This document shows positions 29,292 through 36,150 of a DNA stretch of 64,000 bases, piece after piece (position 1 is the stretch's first letter; every line of letters begins with the position of its first letter). The notes beneath the pieces were generated by a model that was given only the letters and a program-made list of their open reading frames with translations, searched no databases and was not told where the DNA came from. Source of the stretch: Phyllobates terribilis (lineage: Eukaryota); NCBI RefSeq assembly GCF_046119375.1, contig NW_027362767.1, positions 9,238,001 through 9,302,000 on the forward strand. The letters are read 5' to 3'. A program made the translations under genes and the position numbers.

Positions 29292-32200
29292 TCAGATACT
29301 CAGGTCCACCTGAAACTTGGGGTAATCGCTGTAGAAGGTCCCGGCCCCATCGGAGCCTCCAATAATGAGGACCCGGACCAGGCTCCGCCCCTTGCACTCC
29401 TCCTTGTCGGAATCTGTCAGGGAGGAGGAGCTTAGGTTGAGCAGTGTGTGACCGGCGCGGGGCATCTGCGGACTTCCCCCAATCCTGATGGGGCTCCAGG
29501 ACAAGGTGCCTGCAAGAGAAAAGAGTCAGAAATCACCGAACGCTGCTGACACTCCATCTCTTCGGGAAAGGGACCCAGGGCCACCGGTGGGAAGAAGCTG
29601 TACTTACATTGGTATCAGGCCAAGATAAGTTGTGCCCAGGTGCCATCTATCTGTATTATTTACAGCAGCCCAGACCCCCAAGATCCAGTGGACCCTAAGA
29701 CCTAAGGTCATGCCCAAGATGTAGGCACCCTATAGCTTCTCATGTACTACAACCCCCATCATCCTGGCTCTTACCCAGATTGAAGATAAAGGTGTCTGTC
29801 AAGGAGCTGCTGCCAGAACAACCTCCGTGGACCAGGACCTTGTGCTCGGACACTTGCATGGCCGCGTGGAAGCTTCCAGAACACAGAGTCGTCATACAAA
29901 GGTGGGGGAGGGGTGGATGTGATGGGGCAGGAGCACTGTCTTACCAACGGGGGGATGGTCTCTCAGACGTGGATAGGTAGACCACGGCCGTGTACTCCAT
30001 GTAACCTGAAGAGCATGACATTGTGGGTACTTTGCAATGATGTCACACCTATGATGTCACACTGAAGACAGAGCCTTACCCAAGTCCAGGATGTGAACGT
30101 CATTAAGATAAACTGGAGACGGAGCCCGGCGACCCCCGAACAGGACAAGGCGGTTACCAAGGAGCGTAGCACTGTGACTGCAAGGTGGGACAGAGAGAAA
30201 ATGTGATACCCCCCCCATACAGCCACCCCCAAACAATGGGACCCCCCAAACATCAGGAGCGCTCCTCCCCTGTCCATTCATCCATCCCAACATCAGGCGT
30301 CCACTGATTGCTCGGGGTAGACATCCTCTATCCTTGATTTCCTGCGGAGCAGCACTCGCCTTACACAGAGGGTCACCATCCTCACCCGTATCGGGGCAGC
30401 GGCCGCTCGCCCTCCACGATGGGCTGATACCAGATCTTGTATTCGGGGTTGAAGATATAAAGGGCATTGCTGCAGACTCCAGAATCAGCGCCCACCTGTG
30501 GACACAGACCCCCGAACACATAGAGCTCCCGCTGGTACATAGAAGCCGTGTGGTGGCACAATGTGGGCACCTTCCCCACCGCCTGCAGAAGAGGACACCA
30601 GTCAGCAGGGGTCCCTACATGTAGGACATGGCTGTCCTCAGGACTCACCGCCAGCAGCGTCCACTTCCAGTCCTGCGTGTCCAGCACGTACACATTGCGG
30701 AGACAGCGCTTCTCCCGCATCCCTCCATAAACATACACTTTCTTGCTCTCAGGGTCAAAGGTTGCAGTGTGACCCCTAGAGCACGGAGGAGCCGAGCACA
30801 AGCCGTCCATCTGGAACCAGAAGTCGCTGTCTGAGCGGGAGCAAAAAGAAAGGGGTCAGGAAACCAAGGATTAATACTGTACGGCACCCCATCTGGATGC
30901 AATAGCCGCCCCTTCTCCCATGACCTCACCCTCACGTCGCCCCCACTCCCACACCATCATCACCCGGCGCAGTCAGTGTCTCCCCCTCTCCCGCACCACC
31001 ACCACCATCAGGCGCCGTCCCCTCTCCCACACCAACATCACCCAGTGCCGTCAATGTCGCCCCCTCTCCTACATCATCTCCTGGCGCCATCAGTGTTGGC
31101 CCCTCTCCCACACAATCATCTCCCGGCGCCGTCAGTGTTGGCCCCTCTCCCACACAATCATCACCAGGCGCCGTCAGTGTTGGCCCCTCTCCCACACAAT
31201 CATCACCAGGCGCCGTCAGTGTTGGCCCCTCTCCCACACAATCATCACCAGGCGCCATCAGTGTTGGCCCCTCTCCCACACCATCATCACCTGGCGCCAT
31301 CAGTGTCTCCCCCTCTCCCGCACCATCATCACCTGGTGCCGTCAGTGTCTCCCCCTCTCCCGCACCACCACCATCATCATCCGGCGCCGTCAGTGTCGCC
31401 CCCTCTCCCGCACCACCACCACCATCTGGCGCCGTCAGTGTCGTCCCCTCTCCCACACCAACATCACCATCATCATCATCATCATCATCATCATCCGGTG
31501 CCGTCAGTGTCGCCCCCTCTCCTACATCACCCGGCGCCGTCCGTGTTGGCCCCTCTCCCACACCATCATCACCTGGCACCGTCAGTGTCTCCCCCTCTCC
31601 CGCACCACCACCATCATCCGGCGCCGTCAGTGTCGCCCCCTCTCCCGCACCACCACCATCATCCGGCGCCGTCAGTGTCGTCCCCTCTCCCACACCAACA
31701 TCATCATCCGGTGCCGTCAGTGTCGCCCCCTCTCCTACATCACCCGGCGCCGTCCGTGTTGGCCCCTCTCCCACACCATCATCACCAGGCGCCGTCCGTG
31801 TTGGCCCCTCTCCCACACCATCATCACCTGGTGCCGTCAGTGTCGCCCCCTCTCACACACCATCATCATCATCCAGCGCCGTCAGTGTCGCCCCCTCACA
31901 CACCATCATCATCCAGCGCCGTCAGTGTCGCCCCCTCTCACACACCATCATCATCCAGCGCCGTCAGTGTCGCCCCCTCTCACACACCATCATCATCCAG
32001 CGCCGTCAGTGTCGCCCCCTCTCACACACACACCATCATCACCCGGTACTGTCAGTATCGCCACCACCTGACTGGTTATTCAAGGCGTCACCGGGATCCT
32101 GCATGTCTTCCTCTCGCCCATTTGCCGCCCCGACTTCTGGCCTCCGCTGGGCACGTGATATGTACGCACAGTATGGGGCGCTGTCGGGGAGAGCACAGCT

Positions 32201-33792: not shown

Positions 33793-36150
33793 CATATACA
33801 TATACATATACACACACACACACGACAGGAGGAGCGGTACCGTGCGGCGTGTGTATACAGGACAGGAGGAGCGGTACCGTGCAGTGTATATATACAGGAC
33901 AGGAGGAGTGGTACCGTGCAGTGTATATATACAGGACAGGAGGAGCGGTACTGTGCAGTGTATATATACAGGACAGGAGGAGTGGTACCGTGCAGTGTAT
34001 ATATACAGGACAGGAGGAGCGGTACTGTGCAGTGTATATATACAGGACAGGAGGAGCGGTACTGTGCAGTGTATATATACAGGAGGAGTGGTACTGTGCA
34101 GTGTATATATACAGGACAGGAGGAGTGGTACCGTGCAGTGTATATATACAGGACAGGAGGAGCGGTACTGTGCAGTGTATATATACAGGACAGGAGGAGT
34201 GGTACCGTGCAGTGTATATATACAGGACAGGAGGAGTGGTACCGTGCAGTGTATATATACAGGACAGGAGGAGCGGTACTGTGCAGTGTATATATACAGG
34301 ACAGGAGGAGTGGTACCGTGCAGTGTATATATACAGGACAGGAGGAGCGGTACTGTGCAGTGTATATATACAGGACAGGAGGAGCGGTACTGTGCAGTGT
34401 ATATATACAGGAGGAGTGGTACTGTGCAGTGTATATATACAGGACAGGAGGAGTGGTACCGTGCAGTGTATATATACAGGACAGGAGGAGCGGTACTGTG
34501 CAGTGTATATATACAGGACAGGAGGAGCGGTACTGTGCAGTGTATATATACAGGACAGGAGGAGCAGTGCCGTGCAGTGTATATATACAGGACAGGAGGA
34601 GCAGTGCCGTGCAGTGTATATATACAGGACAGGAGGAGCGGTACCGTGCAGTGTATATATACAGGACAGGAGAAGCGGTACCGTGCAGTGTATATATACA
34701 GGACAGGAGGAGCGGTACTGTGCAGTGTATATATACAGGACAGGAGGAGCGGTACTGTGCAGTGTATATATACAGGAGGAGTGGTGCTGTGCAGTGTATA
34801 TATACAGGACAGGAGGAGTGGTACCGTGCAGTGTATATATACAGGACAGGAGAAGCGGTACCGTGCAGTGTATATATACAGGACAGGAGGAGCGGTACTG
34901 TGCAGTGTATATATACAGGAGGAGTGGTGCTGTGCAGTGTATATATACAGGACAGGAGGAGTGGTACTGTGCAGTGTATATATACAGGACAGGAGGAGCG
35001 GTACTGTGCAGTGTATATATACAGGACAGGAGGAGTGGTACTGTGCAGTGTATATATACAGGACAGGAGAAGCGGTACCGTGCAGTGTATATATACAGGA
35101 CAGGAGGAGCGGTACTGTGCAGTGTATATATACAGGAGGAGCGGTACTGTGCAGTGTATATATACAGGACAGGAGGAGTGGTACTGTGCAGTGTATATAT
35201 ACAGGACAGGAGAAGCGGTACCGTGCAGTGTATATATACAGGACAGGAGGAGCGGTACTGTGCAGTGTATATATACAGGAGGAGCGGTACTGTGCAGTGT
35301 ATATATACAGGACAGGAGAAGCGGTACTGCGCAGTGTATATATACAGGACAGGAGGAGCGGTACCGTGCAGTGTATATATACAGGAGGAGTGGTACCGTG
35401 CAGTGTATATATACAGGACAGGAGGAGTGGTACCGTGCAGTGTATATATACAGGACAGGAGGAGTGGTACCGTGCAGTGTATATATACAGGACAGGAGGA
35501 GTGGTACCGTGCAGTGTATATATACAGGACAGGAGGAGTGGTACCGTGCAGTGTATATATACAGGACAGGAGGAGTGGTACCGTGCAGTGTATATATACA
35601 GGAGGAGTGGTACCGTGCAGTGTATATATACAGGAGGAGTGGTACCGTGCAGTGTATATATACAGGAGGAGTGGTACTGTGCAGTGTATATATACAGGAC
35701 AGGAGGAGTGGTACCGTGCAGTGTATATATACAGGACAGGAGGAGTGGTACCGTGCAGTGTATATATACAGGAGGAGTGGTACCGTGCAGTGTATATATA
35801 CAGGAGGAGTGGTACTGTGCAGTGTATATATACAGGACAGGAGGAGTGGTACTGTGCAGTGTATATATACAGGACAGGAGGAGTGGTACTGTGCAGTGTA
35901 TATATACAGGACAGGAGGAGTGGTACTGTGCAGTGTATATATACAGGACAGGAGGAGTGGTACCGTGCAGTGTATATAAAAACACACAGAATATGAGATA
36001 CAGAAAACTGCCCTCAGTATACAGGACATGGGGTGTATATAGGATTGTATGTATATATACACAGATCGCAGGATTTATGTGCTCTCACCTGATGAGCTGC
36101 CGTGGAGCTTCCAACACCGACCAGAGAGCAAAGAACTCCACCCGACCCAT
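29292..36150 (-). CDS. Uncharacterised kelch-repeat protein (538 aa): ~115-aa N-terminal domain, basic linker, six kelch blades (RABEPK/KLHDC-type)
   Basis: Exons 36089-36150, 33515-33688, 33337-33442, 32739-32837, 32438-32636, 32207-32329, 30649-30830, 30386-30582, 30080-30177, 29945-30005, 29775-29872, 29292-29509; all GT-AG, phases consistent, 1617 nt with no internal stop. Six H...GG blades: RWGHS..VLIGG, SRGHT..VYVYGG, LCHHT..LYVFGG, PRYGHS..VLFGG, PRCFHA..VLVHGG, PRAGHT..VLIIGG. Kelch exons are secure; the four N-terminal exons are somewhat less so. Confidence 0.88.
30920..32050. repeat. ~42-bp minisatellite with embedded (CAT/CAC)n (kelch-gene intron 6)
   Basis: CGCCGTCAGTGTCGCCCCCTCTCCCACACCATCATCACCCGG. 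Confidence 0.92.
32867..33290. mobile_element. Degraded palindromic MITE in kelch-gene intron 3
   Basis: Starts TAAGGCTCTGTTCCCACA, inverted ATGTGGGAACAG at ~33168, ends CGTGTGTGAACAG; internal GCAG/TGCG-rich self-complementary blocks. Confidence 0.4.
33700..35980. repeat. (TA)n microsatellite plus 37/32-bp minisatellite (kelch-gene intron 1)
   Basis: ACAGGACAGGAGGAGCGGTACCGTGCAGTGTATATAT; (TA)n at ~33738-33790. Confidence 0.97.

What the first reader, a model, noticed from the sequence alone, without database searches (positions are those of the whole stretch)
29292..36150. Intact 12-exon kelch-propeller gene with an unfamiliar N-terminal domain, where human has no such gene
Seen: a complete, phase-consistent 1617-nt CDS (538 aa) hidden between two large intronic arrays. 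It has a compact ~115-aa N-terminal region (MGRVEFFALWSVLEAPRQLISKGGRRSFQLPLPLPLPQYLLLFGLGDWDSYSGDSFVVAELL...WDGEWHLDIVMECIRL), a basic linker (CRRANTVPKNPRRLRF) and six kelch blades. Established: human GSTZ1 and TMED8 are neighbours, with no kelch gene I know of between them. Inference: an ancestral vertebrate gene lost in mammals. From memory it resembles the uncharacterised teleost gene zgc:163014 (unverified). The N-domain plus kelch layout suggests a substrate adaptor of unknown function.
Basis: partly seen in the sequence, partly recalled or inferred. Interest (0 to 1): 0.75.

Follow-up and report, generated by a model that had tools for sequence, protein, structure and literature searches.

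The report
Frog kelch gene with Hikeshi-like head
This is a real, intact frog gene: the local copy of an old, catalogued but unstudied animal gene (zebrafish zgc:163014). It joins a small domain shaped like the pore-binding head of the Hsp70 import carrier Hikeshi to a six-bladed kelch propeller, and it appears to be missing from placental and marsupial mammals.

Summary
On the minus strand, 12 GT-AG exons (36150 to 29292) join into exactly 1617 nt / 538 aa.

A second in-frame donor in exon 4 gives 547 aa. That form is 90% identical end to end to the deposited Dendrobates tinctorius protein.

The gene is conserved and fixed in place:
- dN/dS against Ranitomeya imitator is 0.21.
- Intron positions are shared with a bird and a teleost.
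- The order TMED8 - this gene - GSTZ1 (convergent) recurs in another frog and in seabass; in zebra finch only the GST neighbour is seen.

The family is older than vertebrates. The same N-domain plus kelch layout occurs in lamprey, amphioxus, echinoderms, molluscs, cnidarians and an ichthyosporean. Vertebrates also carry a paralog, krcp, which survives in echidna. No mammal appears among the 120 best relatives of the zgc:163014 type.

What I add: the N-domain (exons 1-3) has no Pfam match, but it folds confidently and matches only the N-terminal domain of Hikeshi (Z 9.8; next best 5.5).

A disordered linker carries a conserved SSTP site and an NLS-like basic cluster. The propeller is closest to KLHDC2 but has no E3-recruiting box.

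Function is inferred: a two-module, probably nuclear, adaptor.

The parts
36089..36150 (-). Exon 1 (62 nt): start codon ATG at 36150-36148, MGRVEFFALWSVLEAPRQLI; first strand of the N-domain
   Evidence: It is 95% identical to R. imitator L001:10001-10062. The donor is gtgaga.
33515..33688 (-). Exon 2 (174 nt): core of the N-domain, including the near-invariant PLPLP and F..G.W motifs
   Evidence: It is 93% identical to L001:12421-12594. The invariant columns are listed.
33337..33442 (-). Exon 3 (106 nt): end of the N-domain (SLVWDGEW, helix, last strand). Exons 1-3 make exactly 114 codons and end in phase 0.
   Evidence: the folded domain covers residues 1-113.
32739..32837 (-). Exon 4, short form (99 nt): conserved linker motifs GFSSSTPARR and SPLLSESTIAH
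   Evidence: Found only after comparison with orthologs. The same junction is used in the Ranitomeya proteins P0251 and P0263.
32712..32738 (-). Optional 27-nt extension of exon 4 to a second in-frame donor (GAG|gtgggc); it adds VRVPEGPVE and gives 547 aa
   Evidence: It matches the junction in D. tinctorius P0184. The same extension is out of frame in R. imitator.
32438..32636 (-). Exon 5 (199 nt): disordered linker with the basic cluster PKNPRRLRF
   Evidence: conservation; pLDDT below 50 in the model of the ortholog.
32207..32329 (-). Exon 6 (123 nt): start of the kelch propeller (VCPSGRWGHS...)
   Evidence: The acceptor at 32329 was chosen because orthologs conserve VCPS.RW. Pfam Kelch_4 matches.
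30649..30830 (-). Exon 7 (182 nt): kelch blade 2
30386..30582 (-). Exon 8 (197 nt): kelch blade 3
30080..30177 (-). Exon 9 (98 nt): kelch blade 4
29945..30005 (-). Exon 10 (61 nt): kelch, junction of blades 4 and 5
29775..29872 (-). Exon 11 (98 nt): kelch blade 5
   Evidence: The weak acceptor (ctggaag) is identical in R. imitator.
29292..29509 (-). Exon 12 (218 nt coding): kelch blade 6 and the stop codon at 29294-29292. No tail follows the propeller.
33820..35978 (.). Intron 1 minisatellite, 37 bp x 60 copies
   Evidence: The same array fills intron 1 of R. imitator.
30936..32062 (.). Intron 6 tandem array, 42 bp x 27 copies

Best explanation
Identity (shown). This is the intact, selectively maintained frog ortholog of the gene named zgc:163014 in zebrafish. 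The window comes from a poison-frog relative. The gene has stayed in its ancestral place between TMED8 and GSTZ1.

Architecture. The protein has three parts:
1. Residues 1-113 (exons 1-3) form a beta-sandwich with the fold of the N-terminal domain of Hikeshi, the Hsp70 nuclear import carrier.
2. About 110 disordered residues follow. They carry a conserved [F/V]xSSTP site and a basic cluster (PRNPRRLRF in frogs, KKKRL or KKRKL in fishes) that looks like a classical nuclear localisation signal.
3. A six-bladed kelch propeller, closest in shape to KLHDC2, ends the protein with no tail.

Mechanism (inferred, not shown). It acts as a two-module adaptor. The propeller holds a peptide or protein partner on one face. 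The Hikeshi-like head offers a hydrophobic pocket for a second partner. The linker directs it to the nucleus and is controlled by proline-directed phosphorylation.

Odds. I put about 95% on the identity and architecture. I put about 35% on 'nuclear adaptor whose head binds FG-nucleoporins or Hsp70 as Hikeshi's does'.
For: Gene model and reading frame. The model is 90% identical over its full length to D. tinctorius P0184.

Selection: dN/dS is 0.21, with dS 0.21 and Fisher p 3e-17. All three parts are below 0.36.

Gene structure: all 12 exons and their splice sites are conserved in R. imitator. Intron positions are shared with seabass and zebra finch.

Synteny: TMED8(GOLD_2) - kelch - GSTZ1 in R. 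imitator and in seabass. In this window, the GSTZ1 end is shown and the TMED8 end.

Orthology: the names and the tree, where the zgc:163014 clade has support 100 and the window is sister to D. tinctorius.

N-domain:
- The AlphaFold model has pLDDT 88.7 and pTM 0.82.
- Foldseek's top hit is Hikeshi 3wvz, E 8e-4, probability 1.0.
- The Foldseek-independent search gives Hikeshi Z 9.8, rmsd 3.4 A over 103 residues covering the whole domain, with the next best at Z 5.5.

Other parts: the linker is disordered and its motifs are conserved. The propeller is closest to KLHDC2, TM 0.83.

Hikeshi N-domain function (FG-nucleoporin pocket, Hsp70 import): PMC10636164 and PMC12250047.

Paralog: KRCP is expressed like PCNA in proliferating zones of fish brain (PMC4326923).
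Against: - There is no sequence-level link to Hikeshi. Pfam PF05603 does not match any of 60 N-domains, and a profile of the N-domain finds nothing among PDB sequences. The link therefore rests on a predicted fold with 14-15% identity.
- Hikeshi works as a dimer held by a C-terminal domain that this protein lacks.
- The NLS and phosphosite readings come from motif patterns only.
- The KRCP expression data concern the paralog, not this gene.
Confidence: 0.8

Rival explanations
1. The N-domain is only a generic beta-sandwich with no Hikeshi-like activity, for example a cap, an oligomerisation module or a lipid or protein binding module. The protein is then a kelch scaffold whose partners and compartment cannot be guessed from Hikeshi.
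For: No sequence-level match to the Hikeshi family. Identity in the structural alignment is only 14-15%. Many unrelated sandwiches score Z 4-5.5. The dimerising C-terminal domain of Hikeshi is absent.
Against: Hikeshi stands alone at Z 9.8 and covers the whole domain, far above the next match at 5.5. Two independent aligners agree.
Confidence: 0.3
2. It is a degron reader of the KLHDC2/3/10 kind: a substrate receptor that brings proteins to a ubiquitin ligase, recruiting the ligase through the N-domain or the linker instead of a C-terminal box.
For: The propeller is structurally closest to KLHDC2, KLHDC10 and KLHDC3 and matches them by sequence.
Against: The protein ends about four residues after the last strand of blade 6, so there is no room for the BC and Cul2 boxes that follow the propeller in KLHDC2. 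Pfam finds no BTB, BACK, F-box or SOCS box in the full-length ortholog.
Confidence: 0.15
3. It is a displaced or duplicated copy of a characterised kelch gene such as RABEPK, and works as a Rab9 effector in endosome-to-Golgi traffic.
For: Automatic names in several genomes read 'rab9 effector protein with kelch motifs-like'.
Against: - Those names are similarity labels. Other genomes label the same gene KLHDC2-like, ACBD4/5-like, FBXO42-like or tip elongation aberrant protein.
- The gene tree follows the species tree back to cnidarians.
- The locus is fixed between TMED8 and GSTZ1 from teleost to frog.
- All 30 of the representatives whose source I looked up (29 with a usable label) are members of this family or unnamed contigs from non-mammals.
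- From my own knowledge, RABEPK has no N-terminal domain.
Confidence: 0.04
4. It is a decaying or unexpressed gene, and the clean reading frame is a leftover.
For: No RNA evidence for this species could be obtained. No canonical poly(A) signal lies within 1.8 kb downstream of the stop.
Against: dN/dS is 0.21 at dS 0.21, p 3e-17. There are no stops or frameshifts in 538 codons and every splice site is intact. Relatives occur on intron-free contigs barely longer than their coding sequence in run assemblies, which fits spliced mRNA (P0261; P0019; P0049 and P0311).
Confidence: 0.02

Closest known systems
zgc:163014 (zebrafish) and its LOC-numbered orthologs, e.g. Dendrobates tinctorius P0184, Xenopus laevis LOC108698685, Gallus LOC772017
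   Same: Same gene: 90% identity end to end to the Dendrobates protein. Same exon structure, same neighbours and same clade in the tree.
   Different: Nothing of substance. This copy has both exon 4 donors in frame and carries large minisatellites in introns 1 and 6. The family has no described function, and I found no paper on it.
krcp, 'kelch repeat-containing protein' (vertebrate paralog)
   Same: Same layout of N-domain, basic linker and six kelch blades. It joins the zgc:163014 clade and lamprey in one vertebrate clade.
   Different: About 33% identical to the D. tinctorius zgc:163014 ortholog P0184. In the top 120 hits it is seen in frogs, caecilians, ray-finned fishes and echidna, but in no bird or reptile. 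It is expressed with PCNA in proliferative zones (PMC4326923). Nothing comparable is known for zgc:163014.
Hikeshi / OPI10 (C11orf73), nuclear import carrier of Hsp70; PDB 3WVZ
   Same: The N-domain model superposes on the whole Hikeshi N-terminal domain: Z 9.8, rmsd 3.4 A, 103 residues; Foldseek probability 1.0. In Hikeshi this domain holds the FG-nucleoporin pocket (PMC10636164).
   Different: There is no detectable sequence similarity. The Hikeshi C-terminal dimerisation domain is absent and replaced by a disordered linker and a kelch propeller. Whether the pocket is kept was not testable here.
KLHDC2, KLHDC3, KLHDC10 (CRL2 receptors for C-terminal degrons)
   Same: Six-bladed kelch propeller of the same subtype, with the best structural matches (TM 0.83 to KLHDC2). 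Pfam PF24681 matches at E 3e-57.
   Different: No C-terminal elongin or cullin box: the protein ends with blade 6. It has an extra N-terminal domain and linker. Identity is about 21%.
RABEPK (p40, Rab9 effector with kelch motifs)
   Same: A kelch-only relative whose name is borrowed by automatic annotation for this family. By my recollection it has a similar C-terminal blade motif (GG..G.FY.D).
   Different: RABEPK has no N-domain or linker (my knowledge, not tested). It is a different gene with a different history.

Membership tests
zgc:163014 orthologous group | Full-length similarity and placement inside the clade in a gene tree | tested here: met
   90% identity over 547 residues to D. tinctorius P0184. 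The clade has support 100, and the branching order follows the species tree.
zgc:163014 orthologous group | Conserved genomic position between TMED8 and GSTZ1, tail to tail with GSTZ1 | tested here: met
   Window: GSTZ1 ends at 29137 on the + strand and TMED8 ends near 38995 on the - strand. The same order is seen in R. imitator and seabass.
zgc:163014 orthologous group | Shared exon-intron structure | tested here: met
   All 12 exons and splice sites are matched in R. imitator. tblastn segment ends in seabass and zebra finch fall at the same residues.
Kelch beta-propeller proteins (Pfam PF24681, PF01344 and relatives) | Repeated kelch motifs forming a six-bladed propeller | tested here: met
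   Exon-wise Pfam hits. The full-length ortholog scores E 3e-57. The model shows six four-stranded blades at pLDDT above 90, and the fold matches KLHDC2.
KLHDC2/3/10-type CRL2 substrate receptors | BC box and Cul2 box in a helical tail after the propeller | tested here: not met
   The last strand is at residues 540-544 of 548 and no tail follows. Pfam finds nothing beyond kelch.
KLHDC2/3/10-type CRL2 substrate receptors | Arg/Ser clamp for a C-terminal carboxylate on the top face | not tested
   No coordinates or residue-level alignment to KLHDC2 were available from the tools.
BTB-kelch (KLHL) and F-box-kelch adaptors | BTB/BACK or F-box domain before the propeller | tested here: not met
   No such Pfam match in the exons, in 60 N-domains or in full-length orthologs.
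Hikeshi / OPI10 family (Pfam PF05603) | Fold of the N-terminal beta-sandwich domain | tested here: met
   Z 9.8, rmsd 3.4 A over 103 aligned residues covering the whole domain, with the next match at Z 5.5. Foldseek gives E 8e-4 and probability 1.0. Both searches used a predicted model.
Hikeshi / OPI10 family (Pfam PF05603) | Sequence match to the family profile | tested here: not met
   None of the 60 N-domains matches PF05603, even at E up to 10. The N-domain profile finds no PDB sequence.
Hikeshi / OPI10 family (Pfam PF05603) | C-terminal helical dimerisation domain | tested here: not met
   A disordered linker and the kelch propeller follow the N-domain.
Hikeshi / OPI10 family (Pfam PF05603) | Binding of FG-nucleoporins and ATP-Hsp70 | not testable with these tools
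   This needs binding assays.
RABEPK orthologs | Orthology to mammalian RABEPK | tested here: inconclusive
   No RABEPK sequence was available by reference. Indirectly against: fixed synteny, a tree that follows the species tree, and no mammal among the 30 representatives whose source was looked up.

The most novel reading that the evidence does not exclude
The zgc:163014/krcp family is a second, unrecognised class of Hikeshi-type carriers. The Hikeshi-like head would let the protein engage FG-nucleoporins (or Hsp70) directly, while the kelch propeller selects cargo. This would be a cell-cycle-regulated, importin-independent route into the nucleus, present from unicellular relatives of animals to birds and discarded by therian mammals.
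Probability: 0.12. Interest if true: 0.7.

Novelty: new member of a known kind. Interest (0 to 1): 0.38.

Why it matters
As a gene, this is one more ortholog of a family already listed in many genome annotations, so the find itself is ordinary.

The value lies in what the family turns out to be:
- It is an old (pre-animal), well-conserved, two-paralog family with no published function.
- Its head domain, invisible to Pfam, has the fold of the pore-binding domain of Hikeshi. I found no paper describing that domain next to a kelch propeller.
- It is missing from the mammals usually studied, which probably explains why nobody has worked on it.

Xenopus and zebrafish both carry it, so function is directly testable. 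If the head really binds nucleoporins or Hsp70, it would widen a transport mechanism now known from a single protein.

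Tried and rejected
- **First gene model.** My first model had 11 exons and 501 aa. It missed exon 4 and used a wrong acceptor for exon 6.
- **N-domain by sequence.** Pfam on the N-terminal exons and on 60 N-domains found nothing meaningful. A profile of the N-domain against PDB sequences found nothing. A word-indexed search with the N-domain profile among short proteins returned only fragments of the same family, with no stand-alone domain and no Hikeshi.
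- **Literature.** 'zgc 163014' gave 0 papers. '163014' with zgc and zebrafish gave 0. 'Hikeshi' with 'kelch' gave nothing relevant. 'krcp' was mostly noise from a journal abbreviation and gave one useful paper. The Hikeshi structure paper is not held.
- **Closed or empty look-ups.** A look-up of the contig encoding P0184 found no record, so I used R. imitator P0263 instead.
- **Earlier notes.** The scan's notes held nothing on kelch or GSTZ1.
- **Cyclin-docking idea.** I considered reading PRRLRF as a cyclin-docking RxLxF motif. The fish equivalents (KKKRL, KKRKL) fit a classical NLS better, so I dropped it as the primary reading.
- **Joined protein.** The joined spliced protein was not sent to any search or folding tool. 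Searches used single exons by reference, and folding used the deposited ortholog P0184. Exons were joined only inside local scripts that read window.fa, for the frame check, local BLAST, dN/dS and the tree.

Full report
**1. Observation**

The finding describes a gene on the minus strand. Reading the three minus-strand frames and the sequence itself, I placed splice sites by frame and by GT-AG.

My first pass gave 11 exons and 501 aa. Relatives fetched later showed two errors. I had missed a 99-nt exon encoding GFKGLGFSSSTPARR...STIAH. The true acceptor of the next kelch exon lies 12 nt upstream, restoring the conserved VCPSGRW.

The corrected model has 12 exons, listed under parts. Every intron is GT-AG and all phases are consistent.

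Exon 4 has a second donor 27 nt downstream that is also in frame (547 aa). The deposited Dendrobates tinctorius protein uses that junction, and the Ranitomeya proteins use the short one. In R. imitator the long form is out of frame.

The two intronic arrays are real: 37 bp x 60 in intron 1 and 42 bp x 27 in intron 6.

**2. How the searches were run**

Searches used single exons, or an exon pair whose 66-nt intron is open in frame (window:30382-30810:-), by reference.

For folding I used the deposited ortholog P0184 as a stand-in. Exons were joined only inside local scripts that read window.fa, for the frame check, local BLAST against fetched proteins, dN/dS and the tree.

The N run at 19581-20072 lies outside the gene and was left alone.

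**3. What the gene is**

- The exon pair gave kelch Pfam hits (PF24681, E 6e-22).
- In the all-against-all library it found full-length relatives of 510-590 aa, such as Xenopus tropicalis at 73% and axolotl at 58%.
- Searching with the axolotl protein returned 120 best hits, many labelled 'uncharacterized protein', often with zgc:163014 or a LOC number. The other named hits carry similarity labels borrowed from other kelch proteins, such as 'rab9 effector protein with kelch motifs-like'.
- These hits come from salamanders, caecilians, frogs, turtles, squamates, birds, coelacanth, gar, sturgeon, bichir and teleosts.

The window's protein is 90% identical over its whole length to D. tinctorius P0184, and 85-89% to the Ranitomeya proteins. 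The window thus comes from a dendrobatid or a close relative.

**4. Constraint and history**

I fetched the R. imitator locus. All 12 exons are there in order, with the same splice sites.

| Region | dN/dS |
|---|---|
| Whole protein | 0.21 |
| N-domain | 0.28 |
| Linker | 0.35 |
| Propeller | 0.14 |

The whole-protein value uses Nei-Gojobori counts with dS 0.21 and Fisher p 3e-17.

tblastn of the model on seabass and zebra finch loci breaks at the same residues as my exon ends. Intron positions are therefore shared across bony vertebrates.

Neighbours:
- R. imitator: TMED8 (GOLD_2) - kelch - GSTZ1 (GST_N), convergent.
- Seabass: NOXRED1-like - TMED8 - kelch - GSTZ1 (convergent) - an aldehyde dehydrogenase gene (Aldedh).
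- Zebra finch: a GST gene next to it.
- This window: the GSTZ1 C-terminal exon ends at 29137 on the + strand and matches residues 175-216 of GST zeta at E 5e-16. A TMED8-like GOLD exon ends near 38995 on the - strand (the TMED8 call rests on my recollection and on an earlier scan note).

The gene has not moved since the fish-tetrapod ancestor.

**5. Breadth of the family**

A profile of the N-domain run over the fetched proteins shows the same N-domain plus kelch layout in many lineages. These are lamprey, sawfish, amphioxus, a hemichordate, echinoderms, molluscs, cnidarians and the ichthyosporean Chromosphaera (one search adds Acropora).

A maximum-likelihood tree puts the window next to D. 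tinctorius inside a fully supported zgc:163014 clade that follows the species tree. That clade, lamprey and a second vertebrate clade together form the vertebrate group.

The second clade is the gene called krcp, 'kelch repeat-containing protein'. Its best 120 relatives are frogs, caecilians, ray-finned fishes and one mammal, the echidna. The echidna protein has the N-domain.

**6. Mammals**

No mammal is among the 120 best relatives of the zgc:163014 type. That list holds many dozens of sauropsid, amphibian and fish clusters down to 44% identity.

None of the 30 proteins's list of representatives whose sources I looked up is mammalian.

These genes carry LOC numbers or the zebrafish name rather than a human symbol. 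That fits with no human ortholog being recognised.

This is good indirect evidence for loss in therians, but it is not a proof. I could not read the human interval.

**7. Anatomy of the protein**

*N-domain.*
- Exons 1-3 make exactly 114 codons and end in phase 0.
- An alignment of 60 N-domains (A1) has invariant F43, G46, W48, G72 and L74, and a near-invariant PLPLP loop.
- AlphaFold on that alignment gave a confident beta-sandwich with one helix: pLDDT 88.7, pTM 0.82.
- Foldseek against the PDB found one significant family, Hikeshi (3WVZ/3WW0): E 8e-4, probability 1.0, TM 0.62.
- The Foldseek-independent search over 48,161 chains gave Hikeshi Z 9.8, rmsd 3.4 A over 103 residues. This covers model residues 2-114 and the entire Hikeshi N-terminal domain. 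The next hit scored Z 5.5.
- By sequence there is no link: no PF05603 match in any of the 60 domains and no PDB hit with the profile.

*Linker and propeller.* The full-length model of P0184 shows the N-domain (1-113) and the propeller (225-548) as confident. Residues 120-221 are disordered.

Within the linker:
- [F/V]xSSTP is kept across jawed vertebrates.
- The frog basic cluster PRNPRRLRF aligns with KKKRL, KKRKL or QKRKL in fishes, the pattern of a classical nuclear localisation signal.

The propeller has six blades and is closest in shape to KLHDC2 (TM 0.83), then KLHDC10, KLHDC3, plant specifier proteins and LZTR1. Sequence matches agree. The chain ends about four residues after the last strand.

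**8. How it most likely works**

Shown: a conserved three-part protein with two folded modules and a disordered, motif-bearing linker. It has no BTB, F-box or elongin/cullin box.

Inferred: kelch propellers of this subtype hold short peptides or small proteins on one face. Hikeshi's N-domain carries a hydrophobic pocket for FG-nucleoporins and, in the dimer, helps bind ATP-Hsp70 (PMC10636164; PMC12250047).

The simplest reading is a two-handed adaptor that enters the nucleus through the basic cluster. It may be regulated at the SSTP site. Its head may contact nucleoporins or Hsp70.

The paralog KRCP is co-expressed with cell-cycle genes and stains like PCNA in fish neural stem-cell zones (PMC4326923). 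This fits a nuclear, proliferation-linked role, but it concerns the paralog.

I give the adaptor-with-Hikeshi-like-activity reading about 35%. I give about 30% to a head domain that shares only the fold. A ligase-receptor role gets about 15%, and the rest is small.

**9. Comparison with known families**

- It is a member of the zgc:163014 group by every test I could run.
- It is a kelch protein of the KLHDC subtype, but not a KLHDC2/3/10-type receptor, because the defining C-terminal box is absent.
- It is not a Hikeshi family member: there is no sequence match and no dimerisation domain. Its head shares the Hikeshi N-domain fold.
- It is not RABEPK. That label is an artefact of automatic naming.

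**10. Verdict**

The interpretation needs three adjustments:
- The gene is catalogued, not new.
- The family predates animals.
- The architecture survives in monotremes through krcp.

What is worth keeping is the Hikeshi-like head on an unstudied, therian-missing family. I found no paper on it. Interest is moderate: it is a tidy lead for frog or fish geneticists, not a surprise to a specialist.

Noticed in passing
window 28991-29294: GSTZ1 (+ strand, stop codon ending at 29137, AATAAA at 29235) and the kelch gene (- strand, stop at 29294-29292) are tail to tail, with 154 bp between stop codons. No AATAAA or ATTAAA follows the kelch stop within 1.8 kb. Its 3'UTR therefore probably runs antisense across the GSTZ1 3' end.
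   Followed up: partly
window 33820-35978 and L001:10200-12413: The 37-bp minisatellite that fills intron 1 is also present in intron 1 of Ranitomeya imitator at 83-93% identity. The array is therefore older than the split of these frogs.
   Followed up: partly
L001:12421-12594: The deposited R. imitator protein (P0263, 481 aa) skips exon 2, which is most of the N-domain, although an intact exon 2 with good splice sites lies in the locus. This is probably an annotation gap.
   Followed up: partly
window 32712-32738; L001:12940-12965: The long donor of exon 4 is in frame here and in D. tinctorius, but the same extension is 26 nt, not 27, in R. imitator, so only the short form can be translated there.
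   Followed up: yes
P0363 (echidna): The paralog krcp is called 'teleost-specific' in PMC4326923. It is nevertheless present in frogs, caecilians, bichir, gar, bowfin and a monotreme, while no bird or reptile appeared among its 120 best relatives.
   Followed up: partly
L003:12975-13133: In seabass, one tblastn segment spans residues 391-445. Exons 9 and 10 therefore appear fused there, which would be an intron loss.
   Followed up: no
window 36678-37500 and 28393-28777: Further G+C-rich tandem arrays (periods 36-94 bp and 31-162 bp) flank the gene on both sides. The whole window is unusually rich in minisatellites.
   Followed up: no
window 38995-39192 (- strand): An ORF ending ...[27 protein letters not shown] looks like the C-terminal GOLD exon of TMED8, 2.8 kb upstream of the kelch start codon. 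It aligns to the end of the GOLD_2 gene in R. imitator.
   Followed up: partly
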